A stretch of 64,000 nt of DNA from Octopus bimaculoides (GCF_001194135.2 NC_069004.1:8393942-8457941), one strand, 5' to 3'. Shown: positions 3,538 to 64,000, counted from the first letter of the stretch. Notes: generated by a model from the letters alone, not told the origin. Translations and numbers: made by a program.

Positions 3538-4518
3538 TCAGTTATATGGTTTTTCATTTGAATGATTCCGTTTATGAGCAGTTAACGACTTTCTACTTGT
3601 GAATGAGCTACCACAGTTGTTGCAGTGATATGGTTTCTCTCCAGTATGAATACGTCTCTTATGTTTCGTTAACTGATTTGTTAGACGGAATGATATGCCA
3701 CAGATATCACATGAATATGGTTTCTCACCAGTATGAGTACGTCTGTGAACAGTTAGTGAACCTCCAACAATGAATGATTTACCACAGATATCACAGTGAT
3801 ATGGCTTCTCACTTGTATGAATGCGTCTCCTGTGTACTATTAACTGACTCGAGTGAGAGAATAATTTACCACATATATCACAGGGATAAGGCTTTTCTCC
3901 TGTGTGAGTACGTTTGTGTTTAGTTAATTTACCAGCATCAATGAATGACTTACCACAGATATCACAGTGATATGGTTTCTCTCCTGTATGAATACGTATG
4001 TGAGAATTTAAGTGTACTTTTTGAAAGAATGATTTTCCACAGATATCACAGCGATATGACTTCTCTCCTGTATGAATGTTTTTGTGTTTAGTCAAATTAC
4101 CCCTTTCAGAGAAAAATTCACCACAAGTGTTACACTGATACGGTTTCTCTCCTGTATGAGTACGTATATGTCGTGTTAAATCATAAGTCTGAGAGAATGA
4201 TTTACCACAAGTATCACAGTGAAATGGTGTTTCACCTGTATGTGTACGTTTATGTCTGTTTAAGCTACTTGCTACAGAGAATGAATTACCACAGATATTA
4301 CAGGTATATGGCCTTTCTCCTGTATGTAAACGTCTGTGATTGTTTAAGTAATCCGTACGAGAGAATGATTTACCACAGATATGACAGTTATATCGTTTCT
4401 CTTTTCTGTGAATACATTTATGGTTGGAAAGGCGACTCTCAAGAGAGAATGTCTTTTGACAGACATCACAGTGATATGATGATTTTCCCTCCTTTAGCAA
4501 TTCTTCAGAAAAATCCAT
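3538..4518 (-). CDS. G2: C2H2 zinc-finger protein, 326 aa, 11 fingers
   Basis: CX2CX12HX3-4H repeats with TGEKPY linkers; MDFSEEL leader. Confidence 0.96.
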
Positions 4519-6660
4519 TTTATTTTTTTAAATTTCACACAATAGTTATATTGATATTTTCCATTCTATTGATTCATTACAGCACTGATGAAAAGACTGC
4601 AATACTGCCATCAACTATTATATTTGTTGTTATCAGAAAGTGGTAGCAAACTACTTCTTTGTCAATCAGTCCAAATTGAATTAGAATACAAAATCCTCTT
4701 ATAGGCCTTTTAGACAATGAGGAAATATGTTTCACTTGAAAGAACTCTCAGTAACTCAAGCAATAAATTTACAGAAGAGTCGTAACTTATCTGTATAAAA
4801 TCTTCCATTTCTCTTGTAAATGGTGACAAATATTAAGAATATATCTTTAACGCCAATCTCATCCGATACTCTGAAATGATAGTAAAAGAGTGTAAGATAT
4901 TAAAGATAATTAAAAAGTAGGAATTTGACAAGCGAAATTTTACATCAATTACATATTGATAAACCCATGAAATAGGTAGAGTTTCAGATCAGTAAGCCCA
5001 GATAGGTTGGATTTTCTCCGTTCGGATAGGGATGTTTCGATTACACCCACCTATGGCTTTGGATAAGACAGAGGAAGCTTTTTTTGAAAATATATGATGT
5101 TTATCACTCCTATCTGGACAAAGTTTAGCCAATCTTTTTTACAGTACACACTTAACATCGATGAGAGAAGCTTTTTAGTAAAAGAAAAATTTCAGAAAAT
5201 GTTTCGCATATTTAATTAATGAATGGTATTGAACCAGTGTGTGTGTTAATTATATTGGCATAATGGATCGCCCTAGACACAATAAAGTCTTGTTTTTATT
5301 ATTGCAACAACGCCAATTAAACCTGTCTTTTGCATGCTGGAATGCATCAATGTTTGCTAACGGCAAATACTTGTTTCTACTCCACTGTTTCTTTGAAAAA
5401 CTGGAGAAAAGAATCTCATTGTACCTGATTTCACAAATCTACTCTGAGCAAAGGATATTACATGTTGCTTCCAACCTTCACATACAGCGTATAATTCCAA
5501 AATTTCAATTCAATTGTGATATGCTTGCTGAAGGGTATTTAAATTTTGCAGCCAGAATAGATTTGTTCTTAAAAAACATATTTTTACGTCAACAGATTAT
5601 TTTGAAATTATAAACTGAAACGGATTATCTGTGTTTTAAAAAGTATGATCTAAAAAAGTTTTCTAGAAAGAGTAGAAACCAGGATTTATGTAGGTTTAAA
5701 AATTAAATTTTTCCTTTGTTTTTTGTTGCATAATCCTATGATTTCCCGTGTTCTGAACACAAATTCGCAAAAGTTTTCCTAAAACTAAAAAACAAAAACA
5801 AAAAAAAACAACGAAGTGATTAGGCGTTGACTCTAAGATGAAGCAACAGGTCAAATAAAAGTTTTCTTAACGACTTACTTTTGACATGGATTCAAATATT
5901 GGCTGGAGAATTCGGAGACTAAGACAAATGATGACTACTTGTTCATTTCGAAGGATTTTGGTTTGAGCACTCCATATAACCCCTCATGCGTTTCCTTATT
6001 TTTTTGGAATTGTCAGAAAATGTTTGCCAATTTGGTGCTTAAACAAGGATTCCACTTACGAGACATTGCTGGGGTTTAACCACACTAATTTATAAAAAAA
6101 TCTACGTAAAAGACGACGTATTTTAATAACATACTTTTCTGTGAGTAACTGTTTTTTTATAACACGGATACACATGCAGACTCGCCTGGTGCAGATCAAA
6201 TAAAATTATGCTCAAGCGCAATATTTTGGCTCAACTTTTTCAATTTTTATTTTGAAATGAAAAGAAGTGGGGAAATTCGTAATGTCCGCATTATAAATCC
6301 TTAGTTAAAAAAATTCCGACAGTTCTTAGTTGTAATGCGGGGAGGAAAGAGTAAAAATTTCAATTACAAATTGGTTTTTTGTTTTTGTTTTTTTTTTGGC
6401 TTAATCGTGCGAGATAGTTTGTAGAACACAGAGTCGTAAAATTTTTCTGAAAATACCAAAGACTAAAAATGGGTAAATGTTATGACAAGCTACAAAGTGT
6501 GCTTCGATCCAGAATCTATAATAGCCCGACAGGTTTAAATGGTTCTTCGATTAGAACTGCGCTATTCACTTCAATATAATCACCTTATCAGCCAAGTGAA
6601 ACAAGATTCTATTACTTACATACATTATTACAGCATTAAAACAGACGTTTATCAACTTAC

Positions 6661-6850
6661 CGTTTTCAGATGTAAACAGTATATCAGTGCGTTATATATC
6701 AATGTAAATATCTGACGGTTAGAATGAAATTCTTTGATGTTTCACTTTAGAACTTTACCATCAAAATTCAGCTTCCTACAGCAATAAAATCCTAACTTGT
6801 GACAATGAGCAAGTGAAGCTGACTTTACGTCTGCAGCCGAACTTTCGATC
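6661..6850 (-). promoter_or_regulatory. G2 non-coding exon 1 + promoter motif
   Basis: Donor at 6659-6660, acceptor at 4871-4872; same motif at 6803-6850. Confidence 0.75.
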
Positions 6851-9533: not shown

Positions 9534-10430
9534 TCAGTTATATGGTTTCTCATTTGAATGATTCCGTTTATGAGCAGTTAATGACCTTCTACTTGTGAAT
9601 GATCTACCACAGTTATTGCAGTGATATGATTTCTCTCCTGTATGAATGCGCCTTTTATGTACTGTCAACTGATTGGTTCGACAGAATGATATGCCACAGA
9701 TATCACATGGATATGGTCTTTCGCCTGTATGTATACGTCTGTGAACAGTTAGTGAACCTCCTTCAATGAAAGATTTACCACAAGTATCACAGCAATATGG
9801 CTTTTCTCCTGTGTGAATACGTTTGTGTTTTTTCAATGTATCAGCATAAATGAATGAAGTACCACAGACATCACAGTGATACGGTCTCTCACCTGTATGA
9901 GTACGTTTGTGAGAATTTAAATGTACTTTTTGAAAGAAGGATTTTCCACAGATGTCACAGCAATATGACTTCTCTCCTGTATGAATGTTTTTGTGTTTAG
10001 CCAAGTTACCTCTTTCAGAGAATGATTCACCACAAGTATTACACTGATATGGTTTCTCTCCTGTATGAGTACGTACGTGGCTAGTTAAGCCATTAGTCTG
10101 AGAGAATGACTTACCACAGATATCACAGTGATATGGTTTTTCACCTGTATGAGTACGTTTGTGACTGCTTAGGTGACTTGCTACAGTGAATGAATTACCA
10201 CAGATATTACAGGTATATGGCCTTTCTCCTGTATGTAAGCGTTTGTGTGTATATAAGTGATCCAGTCGAGAGAATGATTTACCACAGGTATCACAGTTGT
10301 ATGGTTTCTCGTCTGTGTGCACACATTTATGGTTGGTAAGTCTACTTTTTAGAAAAAATGTTCTTTGACAGATATCACAGCAATATGATGATTTTCCCTC
10401 CTTCTTTGGCAATTGTTCAGGAGAATCCAT
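9534..10430 (-). CDS. G3: C2H2 zinc-finger protein, 298 aa, 10 fingers
   Basis: Close paralogue of G2 lacking one internal finger (HSSQLIV). Confidence 0.96.
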   Translation of the reverse strand: MDSPEQLPKKEGKSSYCCDICQRTFFLKSRLTNHKCVHTDEKPYNCDTCGKSFSRLDHLYTHKRLHTGERPYTCNICGNSFTVASHLSSHKRTHTGEKPYHCDICGKSFSQTNGLTSHVRTHTGEKPYQCNTCGESFSERGNLAKHKNIHTGEKSYCCDICGKSFFQKVHLNSHKRTHTGERPYHCDVCGTSFIYADTLKKHKRIHTGEKPYCCDTCGKSFIEGGSLTVHRRIHTGERPYPCDICGISFCRTNQLTVHKRRIHTGEKSYHCNNCGRSFTSRRSLTAHKRNHSNEKPYN

Positions 10431-14563: not shown

Positions 14564-14819
14564 ATTACTTCCATAGTAAACAGAAAAGTTCTACTCCATG
14601 TCTTAGATGAGTCAAGAAAAGTACTTGACTTCCAATTTCCCTTTTACATGAATGGTTTTACTGGCTATTTGTTGTATTTGTCAACATCAATTTCACATTG
14701 TACAAGATATATTTTATTGTGCAGCCAGCACCAGAGAGGTTGTCATGCCTCTGACAACATTAGAGTGCTGATGTTTCTGTTCATTTGCCACTTAGTTCAC
14801 AGAGTGTATATTCCAATAT

Positions 14820-15230
14820 GAATCATTCGTTACAGAGAATGATCTGTCATAGATATTGCCGTGATATAACTTTCCTTTGAAATGAGTACATTTGTTTAGT
14901 TAAATGATTACTTTCAGAAAATGGTTTCCCAAAGGCATCAATCATATGGTTTTCTTCCTGTATCAATGCATTTGTGAGTAGTTACAGCACTTCTAATACA
15001 GAATGATACAATACAGATATTACAGTGATATGGTTTTTCTCCTGCCTCAATGTGATTATGTTTATTTATATCACTATTTTGTAAGAAAGGTTTACCACAA
15101 ATATCACTCTGACAGGGTTTTCTCTTCTGTATGTAAACATCTGAAAATAGTTAAATGACTGGTTTGATAGAAGGATTTATAACAGGCATCACAGTGGCAC
15201 AGCTATTGTCCTGTATGAACATATTTGTGT
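14820..15230 (-). pseudogene. Decayed zinc-finger repeats in the G4 3' region
   Basis: Frameshifted finger-like units continue past the stop. Confidence 0.8.
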
Positions 15231-16487
15231 TTATTTAACCGATCTGTTACTGATATTGCAGTGATTTGGTTTCTTTCTCGTGTGACTATATTTGTGAGTA
15301 GTTAAGGAACTACTTCCAGAGAATGACTTACCACATAAATTACAGTGATATGGCTTCTCACCTGTATGAATACGTACATGCTTAATTAGGCCAGAACTTT
15401 GAGAAAACGATTTACCACAGGTACCGCAATGGTATGGCTCCTCTCCCGTGTGAATACGCTTGTGAACAGTTAAACCTCTTCTGTCAGAGAATGATTTCCC
15501 ACAGATGTCACAGTGATATGGTTTCTCTTTTGTATGAATGCGTCTTCTGTGTCCCATCAAAAGACTTGTTTTAGAGAACGGCTTACTGCAAACATCACAC
15601 TGATATGGTTTTTCCCCTGTGTGAATTCGTTTGTGAACAGTTAATGGACCACCAGCACTGAATGATTTACCACAGATGTCACACTGATATGGTTTCTCTC
15701 CTGTGTGAATACGTTTGTGAGTATTTAAGGCATTTCCATGAGAGAATGATTTACCACAGATATCACAGTGATATGGCTTCTCTCCAGTATGAATGCGTTT
15801 GTGAGAATTTAAATGTACTTTTTGAAAGAATGATTTTCCACAGATATCACAGTGATATGACTTCTCTCCTGTATGAAGGTACTTGTGTTTAGCTAAATTA
15901 CCTCTGTCAGAGAATGACTCGCCACAAATGCTACACTGATATGGTTTCTCTCCTGTATGAGTACGTATGTGGCGAGTTAGGCTATGATTCTGAGAAAATG
16001 ATTTACCACAGATATCACAGTGATATGGTTTTTCACCTGTATGAGTTCGTACATGATCGGCTAAGTGACTTCTTAGAGAGAATGAATTACCACAGATATT
16101 ACATCTATGTGGCCGTTCTCCTGTATGGATGCGTTTGTGAATATTCAAGTTATGCATTCGAGAGAATGATTTACTGCAGATATCACAGTTATGCGGTTTC
16201 TTTCCCATATGTATATGTCTATGTTCAGTTAATGTGCCTTTTACAGTGAATGATTTACCACAGATATCGCATTCATAAGGCTTTTCTCCAGTGTGGATGC
16301 GTTTATGAGTAATTAAGGTTTGTAATCGTGGGAATGACTTACCACAGATATCACAGTTATGTGGTTTCTCTCCTGAGTGAATAATTTTATGATTAGTAAG
16401 ACTACTTTTTAGAGAAAATGTCTTTTGACAGATATCACAGGGATATGATTTTCTCACCTCCTTTGGCAAGTCTTCAGCAGAATCCAT
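15231..16487 (-). CDS. G4: C2H2 zinc-finger protein, 418 aa, 14 fingers
   Basis: Tandem C2H2 repeats; MDSAEDL leader. Confidence 0.96.
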
Positions 16488-21833: not shown

Positions 21834-23048
21834 TCATGTATGTGTGTATTTGTGTTTAGTTAATTTACATGATTCATAGAATGATTTACTGCAAATATTA
21901 CACTGATATGGCTTCTCACCTGTATGATAACGTACATGTCTAGTTAGGTCGTAACTACGAGAGAATGACTTACCACAGTTATCACAGTGATATGGTTTTT
22001 CCCCTGTATGTATACGTTTATGAGAAGCTAATGCACTTCCATCAGTGAAGGATTTACCACAGATCTCACAGTGACATGGTTTCTCTTTTGTATGAATACG
22101 CCTGTGAACAGTTAATGTACCTGTATAAGTGAATGATTTACCACAGATATCACAATGATATCGCTTCTCCCCTGAATGAATACGCTTGTGAATACCTAAT
22201 GTACCTCCAGCAGTGAACGATTTACCACAGATATCACACTGATATGGTTTTTCTCCTGTATGAATGCGTCTGTTGTGTATTGTCAATTGACTTGTGTGAG
22301 AAAATGATTTACCACAGGTATCACAGTTGTATGGCTCTTCTCCTGTGTGAATACGTTTGTGAACAGTTAATCCTGTTCCATAAGAGAATGATTTACCACA
22401 GATATCACAGTGATATGGTTTTTTACGTGTATGAATACGTTTGTGAGAATTTACCTGAGATCTTTGAAAAAATGCTCTTCCACAGATGTCACAGTAATAA
22501 GACTTCTCTCCAGTATGAATGTATTTGTGTTTAGTCAAATTACCCGTTTCAGAGAATGAGTCACCACAAATATTACACTGATATGGCTTCTCTCCTGTAT
22601 GGATACGTATATGGCGAGTTAGGCTACTAGTACAAGAGAATGATTTATTGCAGATATCACAGTGATACGGTTTTTCACCTGTATGAGTACGTACATGATC
22701 AGCTAAATGACTTCTGACAGAGAATGACTTACCACAGGTATCACATTCATATGGTTTTTCTCCAGTGTGGACACGTTTATGGGTAATTAAAGTACGAATT
22801 CTAGAGAATGATTTACCACAGATATCACAGTTATGTGGTTTCTCTCCTGTATGTATATGGCTATGTTCAGTAAAGTTCCTTCTCACAGTGAATGATTTAC
22901 CACAGATATCACAGTTGTATGGTTTCTCTCCTGTGTGAATACATTTATGAGTAGCAAGTCTACCTTTTTGAGAGAATGTCCTGTGACAGATATCACAGGA
23001 ATATGATGATTTTCCCACTTCCTTTGACAATTCATCAGGAAAATTCAT
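21834..23048 (-). CDS. G5: C2H2 zinc-finger protein, 14 fingers
   Basis: The ORF track starts at 23123. The start homologous to the other paralogues (MNFPDEL) is at 23048. Confidence 0.95.
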   Translation of the reverse strand: MNFPDELSKEVGKSSYSCDICHRTFSQKGRLATHKCIHTGEKPYNCDICGKSFTVRRNFTEHSHIHTGEKPHNCDICGKSFSRIRTLITHKRVHTGEKPYECDTCGKSFSVRSHLADHVRTHTGEKPYHCDICNKSFSCTSSLTRHIRIHTGEKPYQCNICGDSFSETGNLTKHKYIHTGEKSYYCDICGRAFFQRSQVNSHKRIHTRKKPYHCDICGKSFSYGTGLTVHKRIHTGEEPYNCDTCGKSFSHTSQLTIHNRRIHTGEKPYQCDICGKSFTAGGTLGIHKRIHSGEKRYHCDICGKSFTYTGTLTVHRRIHTKEKPCHCEICGKSFTDGSALASHKRIHTGEKPYHCDNCGKSFSRSYDLTRHVRYHTGEKPYQCNICSKSFYESCKLTKHKYTHT

Positions 23049-26757: not shown

Positions 26758-28728
26758 TTATTCTCCTGGTTGAATGCATTTGTGAATTGTTAAGGAAGTA
26801 CTCCCAGAGAATGATTTACCACAGATATTACAGTGGTAAGGCCTTTCCCCTGTATGAATGCGTTTGTGCTTAGTTACATCACTATTTTGGAAGAATGATT
26901 TACCACAAATATCACACTGATAGGGTTTCTCTCCTGTGTGGATACGTCGGTGAATTGTTAAATGGCCTGTCTGAGAGAAAGATTTACCACAGATATCACA
27001 ATGATACAGTTTCTCACCTGTATGAGTACGTTTATGAATTGTTAGATGAGCTGTTTGAGAAAAGGATTTATTACAGATGTCACAGTGATAAGGTTTCTCG
27101 CCTGTGTGAGTACGACTGTGAACAGTTAAATGACTTGTCTGAGAGAAGGATTTACCGCAGATATCACAGTGATATAGCTTTTCTCCTGTATGGGTGTATT
27201 TGTGTTTAGTTAAATTATATGTTTCAGAGAATGACATGCCACAGATATCACAGTGATATGGTTTTTCCCCTGTATGCATACGTTTATGAGAAGTTAACGT
27301 ACGTCCATCAGTAAAAGACTTGCCACAAGTGTCACAGTGATATGGTTTCTCTCCTGTATGAATACGTATGTGCCTAATTAGGCCAGAACTTTGGGAAAAT
27401 GATTTACCACAGGTATTACAGTGATATGGTTTCTCTCCTGTATGAATACGTTTGTGAACACTTAACACACTTCCATCAGTGAATGATTTACCACAAGTAT
27501 CACATTGATAGGTTTTCTTTCTTTTACGAATGTGCCTCTTATGTCTCATTAAACGACTTGCTCCAGAGAATGATTTAGCAGGGTGATACAGTTTTTCTCC
27601 TGAATGACTATGTTTGTGAACAGTTAATGCACTACCATATGTGAAGGATTTACCACAAATATCACAATGATATGGTTTTTCACCTGAATGAATACGTTTG
27701 TGAACAGTTAATGCACTACCATATGTGAAGGATTTACCACAAATATCACAATGATATGGTTTTTCACCTGAATGAATACGTTTGTGAACAGTTAAGGTAC
27801 CTCCACATGTGAATGACTTACCACAGATATCACAACGATATGGTTTTTCCCCTGTGTGAATACGCTTGTGAACAGTTAATCCAGTTCCGTCAGTGAAGGA
27901 TTTCCCACAGATATCACAGTAATATGGCTTTTCTCTTGTATGAATACGTCTCTTGTGTAAAGTCAATTGACTTGTTTGTGAGAATGATTTATCACAGATA
28001 TCACAGTGGTATGGTTTATTTCCTGTATGAATACGTTTATGAACATTTAATGTACTTCTGTTACTGAATGACTTACCACAGATATCGCAAGGGTATGGTC
28101 TCTCTCCTGTATGAATGTGTTGGTGCTTAATTAAAGTATTTCTATCAGCGAACGATTTGCCACAGACATCACAGTGATATGGTTTCTCTCCAGTATGAAC
28201 ATATTTGTGAGAATTTAAATGAACTTTCTGAAAGAATGATTTTCCACAGATATCACAGTGGTACAACTTTTCACCTGTATGAATGTATTTGTGCTTAGTT
28301 AAATTACCTTTTTCAGAGAATGATTCACCACAAATATTACACAGATATGGCTTCTCACCTGTGTGAATACGAATGTGCCTAGTCAGGCCATTACTTCGAG
28401 AGAAGGACTTACCACAGATATCACAATGATATGGCTTTTCACCTGTATGAGTACGTATGTGATCAGCTAAATGACTTCTGACAGAGAATGATTTACCACA
28501 GATATTACATTCATAAGGCTTTTCTCCAGTATGGATACGTTTATGAGTAATTAAGGTTTGTAATCTAGAGAATGCTTTACCACAGATATCACAGTTATGT
28601 GGTTTCTCTCCTGAGTGAATAATTTTATGATTTGTAAGGCTGCTTTTTAAAGAGAATGTCTTTTGACAGATATCACAGGAATATGATGATTTTCCCACCT
28701 TCTTCAACAATTCTTCAGGAAAATCCAT
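26758..28728 (-). CDS. G6: C2H2 zinc-finger protein, 21 intact fingers + 1 internal broken + 1 degenerate terminal finger
   Basis: Homologous start MDFPEEL at 28728 (ORF extends to 28758); in-frame loss of one Cys pair (YHPAKSF). Confidence 0.96.
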   Translation of the reverse strand: MDFPEELLKKVGKSSYSCDICQKTFSLKSSLTNHKIIHSGEKPHNCDICGKAFSRLQTLITHKRIHTGEKPYECNICGKSFSVRSHLADHIRTHTGEKPYHCDICGKSFSRSNGLTRHIRIHTGEKPYLCNICGESFSEKGNLTKHKYIHTGEKLYHCDICGKSFFQKVHLNSHKYVHTGEKPYHCDVCGKSFADRNTLIKHQHIHTGERPYPCDICGKSFSNRSTLNVHKRIHTGNKPYHCDICDKSFSQTSQLTLHKRRIHTREKPYYCDICGKSFTDGTGLTVHKRIHTGEKPYRCDICGKSFTCGGTLTVHKRIHSGEKPYHCDICGKSFTYGSALTVHKRIHSGEKPYHCDICGKSFTYGSALTVHKHSHSGEKLYHPAKSFSGASRLMRHKRHIRKRKKTYQCDTCGKSFTDGSVLSVHKRIHTGEKPYHCNTCGKSFSQSSGLIRHIRIHTGEKPYHCDTCGKSFTDGRTLTSHKRMHTGEKPYHCDICGMSFSETYNLTKHKYTHTGEKLYHCDICGKSFSQTSHLTVHSRTHTGEKPYHCDICNKSFSQTAHLTIHKRTHTGEKLYHCDICGKSFSQTGHLTIHRRIHTGEKPYQCDICGKSFFQNSDVTKHKRIHTGERPYHCNICGKSFSGSTSLTIHKCIQPGE

Positions 28729-29002: not shown

Positions 29003-30657
29003 TTCTGGATGTTGAAGAGAACTGTATTACTTGGAAGAAATAACTCTCAGATAAATTGATACAAAGAGAGTTGCAGCTCTTCATTATGAAATCTCTCTTT
29101 TGTCTGTAAATGGTGATAAATATTAATGATATATCTTCAATGCCAATGTCATTTGATATTCTGAAATTATAGAGAAATAGTGTAAGATATTGAAGATAAT
29201 TAAAAAATACAGATTCAACAGTCAAATTTTACTATAGTCATAAACTAGAAACTTTTACCTCAGCAACTGAACTTAACATTTTAATTTGTTAAATTACATC
29301 ATAAAAAGTTGTGTTAAATTTACACATTTACAAACTACAGATACACTTCCAGATTGTGTAACATTAACATATATTACAATAAACAATAATGAGTATATAT
29401 GATACATGGTTTAGTGTCTTTGGTTGTCCAGGACTTCTTCAGGTCCTTCTCATATTCAGTAATATTCTCAGAATTTGGAACTGAATCCTTATTAAATCCA
29501 TGGGGGTATATTGCTCTCAATCTATTGTCCATAACAACGATGTTATTCTTATTAGTTATTTCATTACTTGTTCTCATTCCAATGTCCAAACCAGAGATAT
29601 TCTCCACATTTGGTGTTCTATTTGTAATGTCACTGCTTCGTTACAATTCTGGCAGAGTATATATAAATGTTCTGGCTTACGGAGACAGGTTCAATCCTAG
29701 GATAAGATCAACTATTACACCTAACAATCTACACTTATAGTCATAACAAAATTTCCAGAATAGTAGACAATAACGGTCCTCTCTCTCTCTCTCTCTTTCT
29801 CTCTGGAAACATTTTTTGTCTAAGCAGACCAATGATCAAACACATAAGTCATGACATTGCCGTTCTTCACTCTGTGACAGTCTAACTAGGAATACATTGT
29901 CTAGTATGTCTCTCACGTATCACGCTGGTAAGGTGCAATTTATACATCTGGCTCCTATTTCAAGGGAATCGACTGACCACATAGTTTCCATCCCGGTGGC
30001 TCACCGTTGTTCTATATCCCCTAGATCTATAACCAAAGTGAAAATGCTTTCTTGGGTATCATGAATTGAATAACAGATTTAAAAGAAAAAGAAAAAAGAA
30101 ACAATCTGGATGAATGAAGAAGGGAAAATTGAATTGAACATTAAGAACACAATACCTCAAAATGCGGCCTACTCAACGAATAACAGTATTCATTACAAGG
30201 GAAGAAACCCTATCACAGAGACATCTATCGTAAATCATTCTCAGCTGGAAGTGGCTCAATAATTACTAGCAAACCTATTCATACAGGAGAAGCGATATCA
30301 CTATCTGCGGGGAAATCGTTCTAGATGACTTTAACGCTTGTCTTAACTTCATCAAATATTTAGGGAAGTTTACCCGATGTGGAACCTATCTTTGAATGAG
30401 CTTGTATGTTTTCAAAGCCATATTTTAAAACAAACAGGCGACATTAACATACAAAACGAAGCGTGTTAAACATAGTATTCCTGTAACTTATTTCATGTCT
30501 GGGCTCTACATCCATATAATTACTATTTTCCTGAAGAAAACATCTTTTACCATCGAAATAGTTTCATTTTTATATAACTACAATAACCTCCAATTGGAAC
30601 ACAGTTCTACTATTCATATACATTATTACAGCATTAAACAAACGTTGGTCAACTTAC

Positions 30658-41473: not shown

Positions 41474-43129
41474 TCACAGGGATGTAGTTTTTACCCCTGT
41501 ATGAATACATTTGTGTTTAGTTAATGTACGTCCATCAATGAATGATTTACCACAGATATCACAGTGATATGGTCTTTCCCCTGTATGGATACGTATGTGC
41601 TTAGTTAATGTACTTCTATCTGTGTATGATTTACCACAGATATCACAGTGATATGGTTTTTCCCCTGTATGAGTACGTTTGTGTTTAGTTAATTTACTAG
41701 TATCAGTGAATGCTTTACCACAGATGTCACACTGATATGGTCTCTCCCCTGTATGAATACGTTTGTGTTTGGTTAATGTACTTCCATCAGTGAATGATTT
41801 ACCACAGATATCACATCGATATGGTTTTTCCCCTGTATGAATACGCTCATGTACAGTTAGTCCTCTTCCACTGCTAAAGGAATTACCACAGATATCGCAG
41901 TGATAAGGTTTCTCCCTTGCATGTAAACGTTTGTGCTTAGTTACATCACTATTTTGGAAGAAAGATTTACCACAAATATCACACTGATAGGGTTTCTCTC
42001 CTGTATGAATACGTCTGTGAATTTTTAAATGACCTGTCTGTGAGAATGATTTACCACAGATATCACAGTCATATGGTTTCTCACCTGTATGAGTACGAAT
42101 GTGAACAGTCAAATGAGCTCTTTGAGAGAATGACTGACCACAGATATTACAGTGATGGAGCTTTTCCCCTGAATGAATACGCTTGTGAACATTTAATTTA
42201 TTTCCCCTTATGAATGCTTTACCACAAATATCACAGCGGTATGGCCTCTCTCCAGTATGAATACGTTTGTGAACAGTTAATGCACTTCTCTCAATGAATG
42301 ATTTACCACAGATGTCACACTGATACGGTTTTTCGCCTGTATGAATACGTTTATGAACAGTTAATAAACTTGGATTAATGAATGATTTACCACAGATTTC
42401 ACAGTGATATGGTTTCTCATTTGTATGAATGCGTCTCTTGTGTATCGATAAATGAGCTTCTTCTCTAAATGATTTACCACAGACGTCACACTGATATGGT
42501 TTCTCTCCTGCGTGAATGTGTTTGTGTCTGTTTAATCTATTTCCATCAGCAAATGATTTCAAGCAGATATCACATTGATAAGGCTTCTCCCCAGTATGAA
42601 CATACATGTGACTATTTAAATGAACTTTCTGAAAGAATGATTTACCACAGATATCACAGTGATATGACTTCTCTCCTGTATGAGTGTATTTGTGTGTAGT
42701 TAAATTACATCTTTCAGAGAAAGATTTTCCACAAATATTACACTGATATGGTTTCTCTCCTGTGTGAATTCGAATGTGGCTAGTTAGGGCATCACTTTCA
42801 GGGAAGGATTTACCACAGATATCACAGTGATATGGCTTTTCTCCTGTATGAACTCGTATGTGTTTGGTTAAATATCTTCTAAAGGCAAATGATTTACCAC
42901 AGTTTTCACATTTATATGGTTTTTCTCCAGTATGAATGTGTTTGTGAATAGTTAAAGTACGTATTAGAGAAAATGATTTACCACAGATATCACAGTTATG
43001 TGGTTTCTCTCCTGTGTGAATCTGTTTATGAATAGCAAGGCTGTCTTTTAGAGAGAATGTTTGTTCACAGAGATCACAAGGATATGATGATTTTCCTACA
43101 TCCTCTGGCAATTCTGCAGGAAAATCCAT
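41474..43129 (-). CDS. G8: C2H2 zinc-finger protein, 19 fingers
   Basis: Homologous start MDFPAEL at 43129 (ORF extends to 43159). Confidence 0.96.
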   Translation of the reverse strand: MDFPAELPEDVGKSSYPCDLCEQTFSLKDSLAIHKQIHTGEKPHNCDICGKSFSLIRTLTIHKHIHTGEKPYKCENCGKSFAFRRYLTKHIRVHTGEKPYHCDICGKSFPESDALTSHIRIHTGEKPYQCNICGKSFSERCNLTTHKYTHTGEKSYHCDICGKSFFQKVHLNSHMYVHTGEKPYQCDICLKSFADGNRLNRHKHIHAGEKPYQCDVCGKSFREEAHLSIHKRRIHTNEKPYHCEICGKSFINPSLLTVHKRIHTGEKPYQCDICGKSFIERSALTVHKRIHTGERPYRCDICGKAFIRGNKLNVHKRIHSGEKLHHCNICGQSFSQRAHLTVHIRTHTGEKPYDCDICGKSFSQTGHLKIHRRIHTGEKPYQCDICGKSFFQNSDVTKHKRLHAREKPYHCDICGNSFSSGRGLTVHERIHTGEKPYRCDICGKSFTDGSTLTKHKRIHTGERPYQCDICGKAFTDTSKLTKHKRTHTGEKPYHCDICGKSYTDRSTLTKHIRIHTGERPYHCDICGKSFIDGRTLTKHKCIHTGVKTTSL

Positions 43130-48318: not shown

Positions 48319-50409
48319 TCAGTGATATGGTTTCTCGTTCGAATGATTCCGTTTATGAGCAGTTAACGAGCTCCTGTCAGTGAATGATCTACCACAGTTA
48401 TCGCAGTAAAATGGTTTCTCTCCTGTATGAATGCGTCGCTTGTGTATTGTTAACTGACTTGTTCGACAGAATGATATACCACAGATATCACATGAATATG
48501 GCTTTTCACCTGTATGAATACGTCTGTGAACAGTTAATGAACTTCCGTCAGTGAATGATTTACCACAGATATCACAATGATATGGTTTCTCGCTTGTATG
48601 GATGCGTCTCTTGTGAACTGTTAACTGACTTGTTTGAGAGAATGATTTTCCACAGATATCACAGTGATATGGTTTTTCTCCAGAATGAATTCGTTTGTGA
48701 ACAGTTAATGTGCTTCGATATGTAAATGATCTGCCACAGATATCACAATGATATAGTTTTTCTCCTGAATGAATACGTTTATGAAGAGTTAATGCACTTG
48801 CATAAGGGAATGATTTATCACAAGTATCGCAGTGATGTGGTTTTTTCCCTGTATGAATACGTTTGTGAACAGGTAATGTACTGCCATATGAGAAAGATTT
48901 ACCACAGATATCACAGTGATATGGTTTTTCCCCTGTGTGACTACGTTTATGAACAGTTAATGCACTTGAATAAGTGAATGATTTACCACAGATATCACAG
49001 GGATGTGGTTTCTCTCTTGAATGAATGCGTCTCTTGTGTATCATTAATTCACTTGTTCCAGAGAATGTTTTACCACAAATATCACAGCGATATTGTTTTT
49101 CGCCTGAATGAATATATTTGTGAATATTTAATGCAGTTGCATAAGTGAACGTTTTATCACAGCTATCACACTGATATGGTTTTTCCCCTGTGTGAATACG
49201 TTTGTGAACAGTTAATCCACCTCTATCAATAAATGATTTACCACAGATATCACAGGGATATGGTTTCTCACCTGTATGAACGCGCCTCTTGTGTATTGTT
49301 AACTGGCTTGTCCGAGAGAATGATTTACCACAGATATCACAGTGATATGGTTTTTCCCCTGTATGAATACGTTTGTGAACAGTTAAAGTACTTCCATCTG
49401 TGAATGATTTACCACAGATATCACAGGGATATGGTTTCTCTCCTGTGTGAGTACGTTTGTGTTTAGTTAATTTACTAGCATCAGTGAATGATTTATCACA
49501 GATATCACAGGGATAGGGCTTCTCCCCAGTATGAATACGTTTGTGAGAAGTTACTGCACTTCCATCATAAAATGATTTACCACAGATATCACAGTGATAT
49601 GGCTTCTCTCCTGTATGAATACGTCTGTGAGTATTTAAATGAACTCTTTGAAAGAATGATTTTCCACAGATATCACAGTGATATGACTTCTCTCCTGTAT
49701 GAATATACTTATGTTTAGTCAAATTACCCCTTTCAGAGAATGACTCACCACAAATATTACACTGATATGGTTTCTCTCCTGTATGAATACGTATATGGTT
49801 GGTTAGGCTATTAGTCTGAGAGAATGATTTACCACAGATATCACAGTGATATGGCTTTTCACCTGTATGAGTACGTTTGTGACAGGCTAAGTGACCTCTT
49901 AGGGAAAAGGATTTACCACAAATATCACAGCTGTGAGGTTTCTCTCCAGTATGGAGATGTTTGTGAGTAATTAACGTACGTATTCGAGCAAATGATTTAC
50001 CGCAGATATCACAGTTGTGTGGTTTCTCTCCTGTATGTATATGTTTATGTTCTGTTAAGTTAATTTTTACAGTGAATGATTTACCACAAATATCACAGCT
50101 GTGAGGTTTCTCTCCAGTATGGAGATGTTTGTGAGTAATTAACGTACATATTCGAGCGAATGATTTACCGCAGACATCACAGTTGTGTGGTTTCTCTCCT
50201 GTATGTATATGTTTATGTTCAGTTAAGTTCATTTTTACAGTGAACGATTTCCCACAGATATCACAATGATATCGTATCTCTGCTTTCTCTTCTTTGTCAA
50301 TACATTTATGAGTAGCAAGGTTACCTTTCAGAGAGAATGACTTTTTACAGATATCACAGTGGTATGATGTTTCCTCTATCTCTTTTGACAATTCTTCAGG
50401 AAAATTCAT
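48319..50409 (-). CDS. G9: C2H2 zinc-finger protein, 696 aa, 24 finger units (the first lacks its last His)
   Basis: Tandem C2H2 repeats; internal 168-bp two-finger duplication. Confidence 0.96.
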
Positions 50410-55194: not shown

Positions 55195-57549
55195 TTAACA
55201 GATGTCATCGTGATGTAGTTTTTCTTCAGAATGAACACATGTATGTTTAGTTAATAAACTATTTTTGGAAAATGATTTGCCACAGATATCACAGTGATAT
55301 GGTTTTTCTCCTGTATGAATGTATTTGTGACTACTTAAAGCAGTACTTAAAGAGAATGATATACCACAGATATTACACTGGTAAGGTTTTTCCCCTGTAT
55401 GAATGCGGTAGTGTTTAGTCACATCACTATTTTGGGAGAAAGATTTACCACAAATATTACACTTATAGGGTCTATCTCCTGTATGAATACGTCTATGAAT
55501 TGTTAAATGAGCTGTTTGAGAAAATGATTTATCACACATCTCACAATGATATGGTTTCTCGCCTGTATGAATACGTCTATGAACAGTTAAATGGCTTGTC
55601 TGAGAGAAGGATTTACCACAGATATCACAGTGGTATAGTTTTTCACCTGTATGAGTATATTTGTGTTTAGTTAAATGATATTTTTCAGAGAATGGTTTAC
55701 CACAGATATCACAGCGATAAGGTTTTACTCCTGTATGGATACGTTTATGAACAGTTAACGCACTCGCATAAGCAAACAATTTACCACAGATATCGCAGTG
55801 ATAAGGTTTCTCTCCTGTATGAATACGTCTATGAACAGTTAATGGACTTTGGTCAGTGAATGATTTACCACAGATATTACAGTGATATGTTTTCTCTTTT
55901 GTATGAATACGTCTTTTGTGCATTGTTAATTTAATGGTTGCAGAATATGATTTGCCACAGATATCACAGTGATATGGTTTGTCTCCTGAATGAATACGTT
56001 TGTGAGCAATTAATGCATTTTTATAAATAAACGCCTTACTACATACATCACAGTTATATGGTTTCTCCCCTGTATGAATACATTTATGAAGATTTAGTGG
56101 TCTTTGATCATTGAATGATTTACCACAGATATCACAATGATATTGTTTCTCTTTGGTATGAAAGCGTCTTTTGTGTAATGTTAATTGCTTTTTTAGAGAG
56201 AATGCTTTTCCACAAGCTTCACAGTAATATGGTATTTCTCCTGAATGAATACGCTTGTGGAAAGTTAGTTTACTTCCAGCAGGGAATGATTTTCCACAGA
56301 TATCACAATCATATGGTTTTTCCTTTGTATCATTGTGTCTCTTAAGTATTGTTAATTCACGTGTTCTGGAAAATGATTTACCATAGATATGACAGTCATA
56401 AAGTTTTTCCCCTGCATGAATACGTTTGTGAACAGTTAATCCACTTCCATCAGTGAAAGATTCACCACAGATGTTGCACAAATAGGGTTTCTCTCCCGTA
56501 TGCATGCATCTCCTGTGTATAGTTAATTGGCTTGTTTGAGTGAATGATTTACCACAGATATCACAGTGATAAGGCTTTTCCCCTGTATGAATACGTTTGT
56601 GAACGGCTACTCCTCTTCCATGAGAGAATGATTTACCACAGATATCACACTGATATAGTTTCCCTCCTGTGTGAGTATGTTTGTGTTTAGTCAAGGTACG
56701 TCCATCAATGAATGATTTACCACAGACTTCACAGGGATATGGCCTCTCTTCTGTATGAATACGTTTGTGAACAGTTAACTTACTTCCATCAGAGAATGAC
56801 TTACTACAGATATCACAGTGATATGGTTTCTCTCCTGTATGAATACGCTTATGAGAAGTTACTGCACTTCCTTTATTGAAAGATTTACCACATATATCAC
56901 ATTGATATGGTTTCTCTCCTGTATGAATACGCATGTGAAAATTTAAATGTACTTTTTGAAAGAATGATTTTCCACAGATATCACAGTGATATGACTTCTC
57001 TCCTGTATGAATGTATTTGTGTTTAGTTAAATTTCCTGTTTCAGAGAATGATTCACCACAAATATTACACTTATATGGCTTCTCTCCTGTATGAATACGT
57101 ATGTGTCGAGTTAGGCCATTTGTCTGAGAGAATGATTTACCACATACATCACAGCGATATGGTTTTTCGCCTGTATGGGTACGTATGTGATCAGCTAAGT
57201 GGCTTCTTAGAGAGAATGATTTACCACAGATATCACAGCTGTATGGTTTTTTACCAGTATGAATATGTTTATGAGTAATTAACGTACGTATTCGAGCAAA
57301 TGATTTACCACAGATATCACAGTTGTGTGGTTTCTCTCCTGTATGTATATGTTTATGTTCAGTTAAGTAAATTTTTACATTGTATGATTTACCACAGATA
57401 TCACAATGATACCGTTTCTCTGGTATCTTACTTGTATTAATACATTTATGAGTAGTAAGCTTGCTTTTCAGGGAGAATGACTTTTTACAGGTATCACAGT
57501 GGTATGATGATTCCCCCATCTCTTTTGGCATTTCTTCGTGGAAATTCAT
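55195..57549 (-). CDS. G10: C2H2 zinc-finger protein, 784 aa, 27 finger units (unit 14 dead; the first lacks its last His)
   Basis: Tandem C2H2 repeats; unit 14 reads [24 protein letters not shown]. Confidence 0.96.
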
Positions 57550-61572: not shown

Positions 61573-62855
61573 ATATTTTCAGAACACACTGCTGATTAAC
61601 TTACCTCAGTTACAGAAACTATCAACGATTTTGAACATTGCAAACAAACAATTTATTTAGCAGGTGCTCTGACCACTAACTACTTCTTTGTTCAGTTAGT
61701 AGCATGTCCTTGATTCCACAACTTCTGTGCACCAAATAGATCAGAGAGTAAACTGTATTGAATTCCTGCAAAGTAGGCACCACTGTTTCCATGATATTAG
61801 AATGCTGACTGCATTTCTCACTGTTTTATCACCTGTTTTCAACTCAGAGATCATTATGTGCAAAGGCATGTTTATTCACCGAAATTATTTCTTCAATCAT
61901 AAATTTAATGTCTGTTTTCCTCATACTTGAATGGATTGGACAGATGCTTTTCCTGACAATACTTACCTGTGTTTCAAGTAAAAGATTTTTTTTTTTATCC
62001 CAGGTCTTTGAAATCACAGAGCAACCAATCAACAAAATGGTCTCTCACAGGCTTTCCACAGTTTGTCAACCAAATTCAAGCACAATGCATTAGTTGACCC
62101 TAGGAGAAAAAAAACTTACCCAAGGTACTGCATTCTAGGATGAAACCAAAATATATGTTTGTAAACTTCTTAACCACATATTCAGGCCTGCATCTGTGTT
62201 ACTATGTTGGTCGAATTAGACATTGTATACACAAATACCTACTTTGAAACCTGCCATTACTTACTGATTGGATCCCTATGTAGTTTTTCAATTTTTATTG
62301 AGACCATCTACATCCTGACCATATTCATTTAGTGACATTTGAGTTGATTTTTTTAATTTACAGCATCACCATATGGCATAACCTTGATCCCTGATATGGT
62401 TTTAATATTGGGGCTATGACCCCCTGGTGGAAGTTGATAAATTATAGAGGGAATTCTATTAACAAGGTGAATACAAATACTTTAATTTCTTGAGTACCAA
62501 CAGTGAAATGAGGTGTTTGAGAGACAGATTAACCATTGAAATCACAGTAATATACCTTCTCTCCTGAATGTATTTAATTAAACAATAAGCTTTTGCAGAA
62601 TGACTTACTACACACATTACAGTGACATGGCATATCCTTTGTATGAAAACATGAGCCTAATTAGGTCAAAACTGTGAAAGAACAGTTTACAACATACATA
62701 TTACATTATATGGGTTTTTTTCCCCTCTGAATGATTACATTTATGAATAATTTATGTATTTCTGTATGCAAACGGACTAACACAGATATAGTTTTTTCCC
62801 CACTGTTTGAAAATGTTTATAAGTAGTTAATGTACTTGAATAAGGGAAGGATTTA

Positions 62856-64000
62856 TCACAATGATGTTGTTTTTTTCACAGTATGAATACGTTTGTGAAC
62901 AGATAATGTACTTCTGTATGAGAATGGTTTACCACAGATATCACANNNNNNNNNNNNNNNNNNNNNNNNNNNNNNNNNNNNNNNNNNNNNNNNNNNNNNN
63001 NNNNNNNNNNNNNNNNNNNNNNNNNNNNNNNNNNNNNNNNNNNNNAGTGATATGGTTTTTCTCCTGAATGAATACGTTTGTGAACAGTTAATGTGCTTCC
63101 ATCAGTGAAAGATTTACTGCAGATATTGCAGTGATAAGGTTTTTCCCCTGTATGAATACGTTTGTGAGAAATTAATGTACTTCCATCAGAAAATGATTTA
63201 CCACAGATATCACAGCGATACGGTTTTTCCCCTGTGTGAATACGTTTATGTTTAGTTAAGGAACTTCCATCATTGAATGATTTACCACAGATATCACAGG
63301 GACATACCTTCTCCCCTGTATGAATGTATATATGTTTAGTTAAAAGATAAGCTTCAGAAAATGATTTACCACAGATGTTACAGTGACATGGCTTTTCACC
63401 TATATGAAAACATATGTGCCTAATTAAGCTAGACCTCTGAGAGAATGATTTACCACAGGTATCACAGTAGTATGGTTTCTCTCCTGTATGAATACGTTTG
63501 TGTTTAGTTAATGTACTTCCATCAATGAATGATTTACCACAAGTATTACAGTGATATGGCTTCTCTCCTGTATGAATAAGTTTTTTGTGAGAAGTTACTT
63601 CACTTCCATTACTGAAAGATTTACCACAGATATCGCACTGATATGGTTTTTCTCCAGTATGAATGCGTTTGTGGGAATGCAAATGAACTTTTTGAAAGAA
63701 TGATTTTCCACAGATATCACAGTGATATGACTTCTCTCCTGTGTGAATGTTTTTGTGTTTAGTCAAATTACCTCTTTCGGAGAATGACTCACCACAAATA
63801 CTACACTCATATGGTTTCTCACCTGTATGAATACGAATGTGACTGGTGAGGCCATTCGTCTGAGAGAATGATTTACCACAGATATCACAGTGATATGGTT
63901 TTTCACCTGTATGAATACGTTTGTGACCAGTTAAGTGGCCTCTAAGGGAGAATGATTTACCACAGGTATCACATTTATAGGGTTTTACTCCAGTATGGAT
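62856..64000 (-). CDS. G11: C2H2 zinc-finger protein, C-terminal part (start beyond the window; spans a 100-N gap)
   Basis: The frame is open from 64000 ([23 protein letters not shown]...) to the gap. Left of the gap the finger frame reads [29 protein letters not shown] with TGA at 62856-62858. The track's end at 62876 is a placeholder-gap artefact. Continuity across the gap is assumed. Confidence 0.88.
62946..63045. other. Assembly gap (100 N, unknown true length) inside G11
   Basis: N run between finger repeats. Confidence 1.

What the first reader, a model, noticed from the sequence alone, without database searches (positions are those of the whole stretch)
3970..63800. Constant-plus-variable zinc-finger architecture: one invariant finger pair in all ten scorable paralogues
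Seen: G2-G11 each contain CG[ED]SFSE[RKT]GNL[TA]KHK[YN][25 protein letters not shown], as finger 5/6, 6/7, 7/8 or 8/9. G5 drifts to QRSQVNS and G7/G8 read GKSF...ERCNLTT. It is usually preceded by [VL]RSHLAD and QTNGLTR fingers. Conservation includes non-contact oddities (GE for GK, KSY linker, FF). Fingers downstream vary in helix sequence, order and number (4 to 20). Known: vertebrate clustered ZNFs use KRAB as the shared effector; none is visible here. Inference: the pair is a family-wide constant module (cofactor docking, dimerisation or a shared core site) joined to a diversifying recognition array, which could be a KRAB-independent TE-control or regulatory system.
Basis: partly seen in the sequence, partly recalled or inferred. 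Interest (0 to 1): 0.78.

Follow-up and report, generated by a model that had tools for sequence, protein, structure and literature searches.

The report
Conserved finger pair, octopus ZNF cluster
Eleven tandemly duplicated octopus zinc-finger genes all keep the same two DNA-reading fingers while the rest of each finger array has diverged, grown or been truncated; the pattern is real and under selection, but it is fairly ordinary for a fast-evolving zinc-finger gene family.

Summary
The window is CM046624.1:8,393,942-8,457,941 of assembly GCA_001194135.2 (Octopus bimaculoides, by my knowledge of the accession). It holds 11 same-strand, single-exon poly-C2H2 genes spaced 6-7 kb apart. All 11 carry the di-finger ...[42 protein letters not shown]..., including the two genes cut by the window edges. 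It is near-invariant, not invariant: 2-4 of 42 residues differ per gene, 9 in G5.

The pair sits inside a syntenic N-terminal block of 4-7 fingers that shows graded conservation. On a gene tree, the pair's recognition helices took 8 and 11 amino-acid replacements. Neighbouring fingers took 24-31, and the next downstream finger took 42.5. Synonymous divergence is nearly the same everywhere (pS 0.35-0.37 vs 0.39-0.45), so gene conversion alone does not explain the pattern.

The extra constraint lies in the helix, mostly at base-contact positions, and not on other finger surfaces. The likeliest reading is a retained "anchor" specificity for a shared nucleic-acid core. A docking or dimerisation module is less likely. 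No KRAB or other effector domain is present.

KRAB-less, tandem, TE-linked octopus ZNF expansions are already published. No evidence from other clusters or species could be obtained. Interest is modest.

The parts
1..347 (-). G1, 5' part only (ATG at 347). The gene runs off the left edge of the window; its pair lies 34-201 nt outside the window.
   Evidence: the gene call is 352 aa; L004 shows [23 protein letters not shown] / [19 protein letters not shown] as fingers 5/6.
3538..4518 (-). G2, 326 aa, 11 fingers, architecture GMNH-BD-C.TOP. Pair at 3973-4140.
9534..10430 (-). G3, 298 aa, 10 fingers. Pair at 9882-10049.
15231..16487 (-). G4, 418 aa, 14 fingers. Pair at 15774-15941 (fingers 7/8, after an extra J-E unit).
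21834..23048 (-). G5, 404 aa, 14 fingers. Pair at 22416-22583. Its second finger has drifted (FFQRSQVNS), making this the most diverged copy (9 of 42 differences).
26758..28728 (-). G6, 656 aa, 21 fingers. Pair at 28180-28347. It keeps the C-terminal V-F-F-F-L module.
35101..36597 (-). G7, 498 aa, 17 fingers. Pair at 36049-36216 (GKSF...ERCNLTT variant).
41474..43129 (-). G8, 551 aa, 19 fingers. Pair at 42581-42748. It is a recent duplicate of G7 (99% identical over the N-block).
48319..50409 (-). G9, 696 aa, 23 intact fingers plus a degenerate first finger. Pair at 49600-49767.
55195..57549 (-). G10, 784 aa, 25 intact fingers plus degenerate ones. Pair at 56908-57075.
62856..64000 (-). G11, 3' part. 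The ATG is at window-equivalent 64444, outside the window. Pair at 63644-63811 (fingers 8/9). The assembly gap 62946-63045 lies inside its C-terminal array.
29102..29204 (-). Conserved 103-nt non-coding block with TTTCAG/TTTACAG acceptor-like motifs, 219-373 nt 5' of each ATG. The other copies are at 637-723, 4815-4914, 10657-10757, 16758-16852, 23340-23435, 36863-36958, 43391-43479, 50676-50773 and 57769-57871.
   Evidence: 75-96% identity, above third-codon-site identity (0.69-0.79). Likely a promoter, 5'UTR or intron end. It encodes no domain.
14801..15232 (-). Decayed pseudo-fingers directly 3' of the G4 stop codon, remnants of the V-F-L module. Similar remnants lie after G2 (3197-3510), G3 (8520-9529), G5 (21647-21830), G6 (26626-26745), G7 (34242-34759), G9 (47185-48217) and G11 (62499-62875).

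Best explanation
This is a lineage-specific tandem cluster of KRAB-less, single-exon poly-C2H2 zinc-finger genes in Octopus bimaculoides. The genes arose by whole-gene tandem duplication from one long ancestral gene.

Shown here. All copies inherit a short acidic leader (M-D/N-F-P-E-E-L...), an N-terminal block of fingers and, within it, the di-finger E-F (helices S-ERGNLTK and F-QKVHLNS). The array 3' of the pair evolves in three ways: fingers are amplified or lost inside the array (runs such as AAAAA, CCCC, FFF), helix residues are replaced at unconstrained or higher rates, and premature stops truncate the array. The helices of the pair are under purifying selection in every lineage of the cluster.

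Inferred. The pair works as an 'anchor', a conserved nucleic-acid specificity. By the textbook recognition code (my knowledge, low confidence) this is roughly 5'-NGA-GAC-3'. Every paralogue would need it to engage a shared class of targets, while the neighbouring and downstream fingers change and give each paralogue its own extended site. What the targets are (TE families or neural regulatory elements) and which effector is recruited are unknown.
For: Locus and genes: exact gene calls on GCA_001194135.2 CM046624.1; 11 same-strand ORFs; only C2H2 Pfam models; canonical di-finger whose nearest solved relatives are DNA-bound ZNF568, Aart and PRDM9.

Common descent and syntenic N-block: finger-type strings, gene tree, upstream block and 3' flank homology.

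Selection on the pair:
- NG86 helix pN is 0.086 and 0.118, against 0.25-0.32 in the N-terminal neighbours and 0.46 in the next finger. pS is 0.36 against 0.30-0.50.
- Parsimony on the 11-gene tree gives helix replacements of 8 and 11, against 24, 26, 30.8 and 42.5. Whole-finger synonymous counts are 28-30.5 against 36-42.
- Fisher p = 0.0024 against all flanks and 0.017 against the N-terminal flanks.
- Heterogeneity chi-square within the N-block gives p = 0.039. Monte-Carlo for the best adjacent pair gives p = 0.0018.

Not homogenised: third-site identity is 0.79 against 0.69-0.72, and dS is about 0.47.

The constraint is helix-specific. Contact positions (-1, 2, 3, 6) take 5.0 replacements per finger against 19.8 in the flanks. 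Hairpin (7.2 vs 9.5), H-x3-H (7.5 vs 6.2) and linker (2.5 vs 4.2) are not different. Scaffold N/S was 0.80 in both pair and flanks in the 10-gene count.

Natural controls. Downstream V fingers are internal paralogues of pair finger 1 (nt distance 0.20-0.23 vs background 0.33), yet their helices diverged. The equally old V-F-L module was lost to premature stops in at least 3-5 genes.

The genes are functional: ORFs are intact, and scaffold pN is 0.04-0.13 against pS of 0.34-0.50.
Against: The statistics rest on 11 related genes and few events. The strict MK-type test using helix codons only is not significant (p = 0.08 against all flanks, p = 0.32 against the N-terminal flanks). The stronger tests assume a uniform synonymous rate within a finger and treat synonymous counts as error-free.

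Synonymous divergence at the pair is slightly lower than in the flanks, so a small conversion or mutational component is not excluded.

The enrichment of the deficit at contact over non-contact helix positions is only a trend (p = 0.45).

Other finger types (K, L, F, Q) are equally conserved where present.

Glu instead of Lys after the second Cys, and a non-Pro linker, could weaken DNA binding of finger E.

No binding data exist, no target was identified, and no orthologue from another species could be retrieved.
Confidence: 0.55

Rival explanations
1. The pair is a protein-protein module for cofactor docking or homo/hetero-dimerisation. It would stand in for the missing KRAB-type effector domain, and the variable array would provide all DNA recognition.
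For: No effector domain is detectable. Finger E carries Glu where canonical fingers have a phosphate-contacting Lys. The E-F linker is TGEKS rather than TGEKP. Both are kept in most copies. C2H2 di-fingers that dimerise exist, for example in the Ikaros family (my knowledge; Ikaros, Eos and Helios chains appear as weaker hits).
Against: The extra constraint is confined to the recognition helix. It is absent from the hairpin, inter-His and linker surfaces, and scaffold N/S equals that of neighbouring fingers. The 'odd' residues are not fixed: GK in G7/G8, GD in G5, GEKL in G6, GERS in G1. The same GESF/GEKS scaffold occurs with a different helix in an unrelated fragment. The pair is embedded in a continuous array with canonical TGEKP linkers on both sides, unlike separated dimerisation fingers. 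The conserved acidic leader (pN/pS 0.47) is at least as good a candidate for a docking motif.
Confidence: 0.15
2. There is no special function. The apparent constancy is a by-product of duplication history, mutational mechanics and ascertainment. N-terminal fingers cannot be removed by premature stops. Unequal crossing-over acts mainly in the homogeneous downstream repeats. Among about 6 aligned fingers, some two will look most conserved.
For: Truncation bias is real: decayed fingers lie 3' of most stop codons. Downstream arrays are built of amplified A, C and F types. The whole N-block is syntenic, and the finger before the pair has similar overall identity. The helix-only MK test is not significant. 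Other types are equally conserved in subsets.
Against: Mechanics explain whether a finger is present, not whether its helix stays the same. Within the same N-block, at the same age and the same synonymous divergence, the pair's helices took 2.2-3.9 times fewer replacements. This survives correction for choosing the best adjacent pair (p about 0.002) and an unselected heterogeneity test (p = 0.039). J-E unit insertions show that crossing-over does occur in the N-block, yet it never split or removed E-F.
Confidence: 0.2
3. The pair is kept alike by gene conversion, or by a constraint at nucleotide level such as an RNA element, splice enhancer or small-RNA target, rather than by selection on the protein.
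For: Third-codon-site identity is somewhat higher at the pair (0.79 vs 0.69-0.72). The longest identical runs are longer in finger F (median 30 nt vs 15-20).
Against: Synonymous sites are far from homogenised (pS 0.35-0.37, dS about 0.47-0.51). There are 16 synonymous changes in the pair's 16 helix codons on the tree. No Rfam family matches. Pairwise relationships at the pair follow the gene tree.
Confidence: 0.05

Closest known systems
Octopus/coleoid lineage-specific C2H2 zinc-finger expansions (Albertin et al. 2015, cited from memory and via PMC10547256; Holzinger et al. 2025, PMC12513265; Wells et al. 2023, PMC10547256)
   Same: The locus lies in an O. bimaculoides chromosome. It is a tandem same-strand cluster of poly-C2H2 genes with no KRAB. 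The idea that such genes act on TEs is already published as a computational prediction for octopus. Neural expression and octopus-specific duplication waves are described.
   Different: Those papers work at gene-family level. In the text I read, none describes finger-level architecture, a universal di-finger, an N-terminal leader or truncated arrays. Whether this cluster belongs to one of their named expansion clades was not tested.
Vertebrate KRAB-ZFP (KZNF) clusters
   Same: Tandem clusters, and divergence chiefly by finger gain or loss inside the array and by changes at DNA-contacting residues. Paralogues or orthologues are expected to share targets through 'short subsets of conserved fingers' (PMC3126818). 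The nearest solved structure by sequence is the KZFP ZNF568.
   Different: No KRAB domain. The coding region is a single exon starting 15 residues before finger 1. The effector mechanism is unknown.
FiNZ-ZNFs of cyprinid fish (Wells et al. 2023)
   Same: A KRAB-less, lineage-specific, massively duplicated ZNF family defined by a short, acidic, conserved N-terminal sequence. Here too a short acidic leader is conserved in all 11 genes.
   Different: The FiNZ domain is a 28-aa sequence specific to cyprinids. The octopus leader is about 15 aa, and no similarity to FiNZ was tested. Here the family signature also includes specific fingers.
Ikaros-family C-terminal dimerisation di-finger (my knowledge)
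   Same: A pair of C2H2 fingers conserved across paralogues while other parts differ. It serves as a precedent for a finger pair used for protein-protein contacts.
   Different: Ikaros dimerisation fingers are separated from the DNA-binding fingers and have atypical sequences. The octopus pair is canonical, embedded in a continuous TGEKP-linked array, and constrained at base-contact positions.

Membership tests
Krueppel-type poly-C2H2 zinc-finger proteins | Tandem C-x2-C-x12-H-x3-4-H units joined by TGEKP-like linkers | tested here: met
   170 matches on the minus strand and 10-26 per gene. Pfam zf-C2H2 and zf-H2C2_2 score far above their cut-offs.
KRAB-ZFP | N-terminal KRAB domain (PF01352) | tested here: not met
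   No KRAB hit in G3, G6 or G10. Only about 15 residues precede finger 1. No conserved coding block lies upstream, and intergenic ORFs carry no such domain.
SCAN-, BTB- or ZAD-ZNF | The corresponding N-terminal domain | tested here: not met
   No such Pfam hits.
Octopus-specific C2H2 expansion | Encoded in an octopus genome as a tandem cluster of paralogues | tested here: met
   Exact gene calls on GCA_001194135.2 CM046624.1 at about 8.39-8.46 Mb. The species name comes from my knowledge of the accession. 11 paralogues share 67-99% identity over the N-block.
Octopus-specific C2H2 expansion | Phylogenetic placement inside an octopus-only clade, with no squid or non-cephalopod orthologues | not testable with these tools
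   Protein searches were swamped by generic poly-ZNFs. No cephalopod genome collection is searchable.
FiNZ-ZNF | 28-aa FiNZ N-terminal domain, cyprinid-specific | not tested
   The leader here is about 15 aa and the organism is a mollusc. No FiNZ sequence was available for alignment.
Dimerising di-finger (Ikaros type) | The finger pair mediates self-association and does not contact DNA | not testable with these tools
   Indirect evidence only: constraint at base-contact positions and a canonical sequence argue against it.
   Tree-aware helix replacements are 8 and 11 against 24-42.5. p = 0.002-0.04 depending on the test, but the helix-only MK test is not significant. Some other types are equally conserved in subsets.
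   pS is 0.35-0.37 at the pair against 0.39-0.45 in the flanks. Third-site identity is 0.79 against 0.69-0.72.
   None of 402 retrieved database proteins and none of 97 metagenome loci has the pair. However, those searches could not target octopus paralogues or orthologues.

The most novel reading that the evidence does not exclude
The E-F di-finger, possibly together with the acidic leader, is the effector-recruiting or oligomerising element of a previously unrecognised KRAB-independent octopod ZNF subfamily. It would be a finger pair that is repurposed as the constant 'handle' through which dozens of paralogues with different DNA specificities plug into one chromatin-silencing or neural regulatory pathway.
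Probability: 0.1. Interest if true: 0.7.

Novelty: new member of a known kind. Interest (0 to 1): 0.3.

Why it matters
Octopus genomes carry one of the largest C2H2 expansions known, and nobody knows how these KRAB-less proteins work or what they bind. A di-finger kept by selection in every member of a cluster gives a concrete experimental handle. It predicts a shared core motif that could be sought in SELEX or DAP-seq data. It also offers a natural mutant series: G5 and G7/G8 have altered pairs, and several genes are truncated. The conserved acidic leader is a candidate effector motif. As an evolutionary pattern it matches what is known from vertebrate KZNFs, where conserved finger subsets sit beside rapidly changing arrays, so it extends a known principle to molluscs and does not reveal a new one.

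Tried and rejected
(1) Three word-index protein searches were run: the N-block of G6, the 56-aa pair, and full-length G3. Ranking by summed multi-finger score and an apparent length window meant that generic vertebrate and other poly-ZNFs filled the lists. No orthologue or paralogue with the pair was recovered. The octopus hits P0005, P0122, P0124, P0127, P0128 and P0132 lack it.
(2) The exhaustive HMMER search with G10 returned a top 150 made of giant poly-ZNFs, none with the pair or the leader.
(3) A metagenome scan with back-translated FFQKVHLN gave 97 loci, none in a C2H2 context.
(4) Exact-sequence cluster look-up of nine window proteins found none in that collection. The G2 gene is not on record.
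(5) A hidden N-terminal exon or domain was considered and rejected. The 1 kb upstream aligns only as non-coding DNA with indels not in multiples of three. Intergenic ORFs give only a weak integrase-remnant hit.
(6) A link between L-type fingers (FFQNSDVTK) and pair finger 2, as an internal duplicate, is not supported above background.
(7) Rfam and tRNA scans found nothing.
(8) Structure prediction was not run. A canonical di-finger would fold as two beta-beta-alpha units, and partners cannot be modelled with the tool available.

Full report
WHAT IS THERE. The 64-kb window is 35% G+C and contains three N-runs. All 170 matches to the C2H2 pattern lie on the minus strand. They fall into eleven long open frames spaced 6-7 kb apart, G1 to G11 from left to right. 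Exact-product look-ups place G6, G10 and G3 on GCA_001194135.2, record CM046624.1, so the window is 8,393,942-8,457,941 of that record. From my own knowledge, that accession is the chromosome-scale Octopus bimaculoides assembly. The nearest named database hits are also Octopus. The gene calls on record are exactly the ATG-to-stop single-exon ORFs: 298, 418, 656, 696 and 784 aa, plus 352 aa for G1.

Each protein starts with a roughly 15-residue acidic leader (M-D/N-F-P-E-E-L-P-K-E-V-G-K-S-S) and is otherwise made only of fingers. Pfam finds only C2H2-type models and no KRAB, SCAN, BTB or ZAD domain. The 1 kb upstream aligns as non-coding DNA. It contains one well-conserved 103-nt block with acceptor-like TTTCAG/TTTACAG motifs, 219-373 nt 5' of the ATG. 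Intergenic ORFs carry no domain except a weak integrase remnant.

THE OBSERVATION. Using flanking DNA from the same record, I completed the two genes cut by the window. G11 starts with MDSPEELPKKVGKSS and has the pair as fingers 8/9. G1 has it as fingers 5/6, just outside the window. So 11 of 11 genes carry it.

It is near-invariant, not invariant. Each gene differs from the 42-residue consensus at 2-4 positions, and G5 at 9. The helices said to 'usually' precede the pair ([VL]RSHLAD, QTNGLTR) occur in only 4 and 3 genes.

Two gaps (6883-7534 and 11960-12287) are intergenic, with nothing finger-like at their edges. The third (62946-63045) lies in G11's C-terminal array, far 3' of the pair. Its edges are at the same register of the 84-bp repeat to within 1 nt. 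It therefore probably hides whole fingers, and the ORF plausibly runs on to ...KKTTSL*, as in G7/G8. This cannot be proven.

ARCHITECTURE. I clustered all 168 fingers by nucleotide distance to give each gene a string of finger types. Examples are G3 GMNH-BD-.TOP, G6 GEKR-BD-..IAAAAAQ.VFFFL and G9 JEJE.H-BD-ACAIA.ISASAIAOP, where B and D are the pair.

The constant part is therefore a whole syntenic N-terminal block: leader, first finger, zero to two copies of a J-E two-finger unit, two further fingers, then the pair. The pair is its most uniform element. Downstream arrays are built from a few types amplified in tandem (AAAAA, CCCC, FFF).

Directly 3' of most stop codons lie decayed pseudo-fingers. 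After G3, G4 and G9 these include recognisable remnants of a V-F-L module that is intact in G6, G7, G8 and G10. So the ancestor had a longer array, and several copies were shortened by premature stops.

IS THE PAIR SPECIALLY CONSERVED? I indexed fingers relative to the pair.
- Pairwise Nei-Gojobori estimates give whole-finger identity of 0.82-0.83 for the pair, 0.79-0.81 for the finger before it, 0.70-0.72 for the two before that, and 0.62 for the next finger.
- The difference lies in the recognition helix (positions -2 to +6). pN is 0.086 and 0.118 at the pair, 0.25-0.32 in the N-terminal neighbours and 0.46 downstream, at similar pS (0.36 vs 0.30-0.50).
- Parsimony on the 11-gene NJ tree gives helix replacements of 24, 26, 30.8, 8, 11 and 42.5 across the six positions. 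Whole-finger synonymous counts are 41.5, 36, 42.2, 30.5, 28 and 37.
- With whole-finger synonymous counts as the yardstick, Fisher p = 0.0024 against all flanks and 0.017 against the N-terminal flanks.
- The stricter test using helix codons only is not significant (p = 0.08 and 0.32), because synonymous counts are small.
- An unselected heterogeneity test within the N-block gives p = 0.039. A Monte-Carlo test that allows for choosing the best adjacent pair gives p = 0.0018.

Synonymous sites are not homogenised. Third-site identity is 0.79 against 0.69-0.72, and dS is about 0.47.

Two qualifications apply. Other finger types (K, L, F, Q) keep their helices equally well in the subsets of genes that have them, although those clusters are similarity-defined and so biased. 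The pair's distinction is that it is universal.

WHAT KIND OF CONSTRAINT? The deficit is largest at the canonical base-contact positions -1, 2, 3 and 6: 5.0 replacements per finger against 19.8 in the flanks. It is smaller at the other helix positions (4.5 vs 11.0). It is absent from the beta-hairpin (7.2 vs 9.5), the H-x3-H segment (7.5 vs 6.2) and the linker (2.5 vs 4.2). Scaffold N/S was 0.80 in both pair and flanks in the 10-gene count.

By sequence the pair is a canonical di-finger. Its nearest solved relatives are DNA-bound arrays (ZNF568, Aart, PRDM9).

- GE becomes GK in G7/G8 and GD in G5.
- The GEKS linker is GEKL in G6 and GERS in G1.
- A hydrophobic residue at -2 is common in ZNF568 and in this cluster's other fingers.
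- A broken relative from an unrelated metagenome contig carries GESF...GEKS with a different helix.

A natural control exists. V-type fingers in G5, G6, G10 and G11 are the closest relatives of pair finger 1 (nt distance 0.20-0.23 vs background 0.33), but their helices have diverged (ETYNLTK, EKYHLTK, EAYLLTK, ESCKLTK). The constraint therefore belongs to the N-proximal copy, not to the finger lineage.

INTERPRETATION. The best-supported reading has two parts. The first is a tandem cluster derived from one long ancestral gene. The second is a di-finger 'anchor' whose nucleic-acid specificity every paralogue must keep, while neighbouring and downstream fingers change by substitution, finger amplification or loss, and truncation. 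By the textbook recognition code (my knowledge, low confidence) the pair would read about 5'-NGA-GAC-3'.

A docking or dimerisation role is possible but fits the pattern of constraint less well. The conserved acidic leader (pN/pS 0.47) is an equally good candidate for an effector motif. A null explanation, combining mechanical bias and ascertainment, accounts for why N-terminal fingers persist. It does not account for why only these two keep their helices.

COMPARISON WITH WHAT IS KNOWN. Large, tandem, lineage-specific, KRAB-less C2H2 expansions in octopus are well documented and linked to neural expression (PMC12513265). Octopus ZNF motifs were computationally predicted to be enriched in TE consensus sequences, explicitly extending the KZNF-TE idea beyond KRAB (PMC10547256). 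In primate KZNFs, finger gain and loss is the commonest route of divergence, and proteins are expected to share targets through short subsets of conserved fingers (PMC3126818). The present cluster is a clear molluscan instance of that pattern, with a specific di-finger signature that I did not find described.

LIMITS. No evidence from other clusters or species could be obtained. All protein searches were swamped by generic poly-ZNFs, and no cephalopod genome collection is searchable. 'Family-wide' is therefore shown for 11 neighbouring genes only. The other octopus ZNFs I could inspect lack the pair.

VERDICT. This is a new member of a known kind, with interest of about 0.3.

Noticed in passing
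window 3197-3510, 8520-9529, 14801-15232, 21647-21830, 26626-26745, 34242-34759, 47185-48217, 62499-62875 (minus strand): Decayed pseudo-fingers with stops and frameshifts lie directly 3' of most stop codons. After G3, G4 and G9 they are recognisable remnants of the V-F-L module that is intact in G6, G7, G8 and G10. The ancestral gene was therefore longer, and several paralogues were shortened by premature stops.
   Followed up: partly
window 637-723, 4815-4914, 10657-10757, 16758-16852, 23340-23435, 29102-29204, 36863-36958, 43391-43479, 50676-50773, 57769-57871 (minus strand): A 103-nt non-coding block lies 219-373 nt 5' of every ATG and is 75-96% identical between paralogues, above third-codon-site identity. 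It contains a polypyrimidine run plus TTTCAG and TTTACAG, and looks like an intron 3' end, 5'UTR or promoter element. No transcript data were available.
   Followed up: partly
G4 16194-16277, G5 22836-22919, G9 50188-50271 and 50020-50103, G10 57328-57411; G11 in L003: A two-finger unit, J (TVK.NLTEH) plus E (SRIRTLITH), is present in 0, 1 or 2 copies N-terminal to the pair. Unequal crossing-over therefore also acts in the 'constant' block. This explains why the pair's rank shifts between 5/6 and 8/9.
   Followed up: partly
G6 27175-27258, G10 55636-55719, G11 63305-63388, G5 21825-21908: Downstream 'E-like' fingers (SE..LTKHKY.HTGEK[LV]) are the closest relatives of pair finger 1 (nt distance 0.20-0.23 vs background 0.33), but their helices have diverged. 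They are probably old internal duplicates. G5 ends right after such a finger.
   Followed up: yes
window 62946-63045 (G11): The edges of the assembly gap fall at the same register of the 84-bp finger repeat to within 1 nt (...CCA TAT CAC T | TGT GAT ATC TGT...). This suggests a collapsed run of whole fingers, not a random break.
   Followed up: yes
G7 35101-36597 vs G8 41474-43129: G7 and G8 are a very recent duplicate pair, 99% identical over the N-block, yet they already differ in finger number (17 vs 19, CC vs CCCC at the C-terminus). They share the only GK/ERCNLTT variant of pair finger 1.
   Followed up: partly
G9 about 50300-50400, G10 about 57440-57540; G6 between fingers 13 and 14; G10 between fingers 12 and 13: Several fingers are degenerate. 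The first finger of G9 and G10 has lost its His ligands ([17 protein letters not shown]). G6 and G10 each carry one broken internal finger (YHPAKSFSGASRLMRHKRH..., [22 protein letters not shown]...).
   Followed up: no
window 13804-14406 (+): A 200-aa ORF gives a weak hit to an integrase core domain (rve_3, E = 5e-5, below the curated cut-off). It is probably a transposon or retroelement remnant between G3 and G4, and local G+C is higher (0.39-0.40).
   Followed up: no
window 30172-30291, 38314-38397, 44506-44694 (+ strand): Short finger-like fragments lie on the opposite strand in intergenic DNA. They could be remnants of inverted ZNF pieces.
   Followed up: no
G2, window 3538-4518: G2 is an intact 326-aa ORF with a normal architecture, yet no gene with this product is on record in the assembly's gene calls. 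Its neighbours G1, G3 and G4 are called.
   Followed up: no
L002 (ENA metagenome contig, 619 bp): This stray fragment is 72-79% identical to the 5' ends of the window genes. It has a related leader (FHEEMAKEIGKSS), broken zinc ligands, an in-frame stop, and the GESF...GEKS scaffold with a different helix (EGSTLIT). It is a diverged or pseudogenised relative of unknown source.
   Followed up: partly
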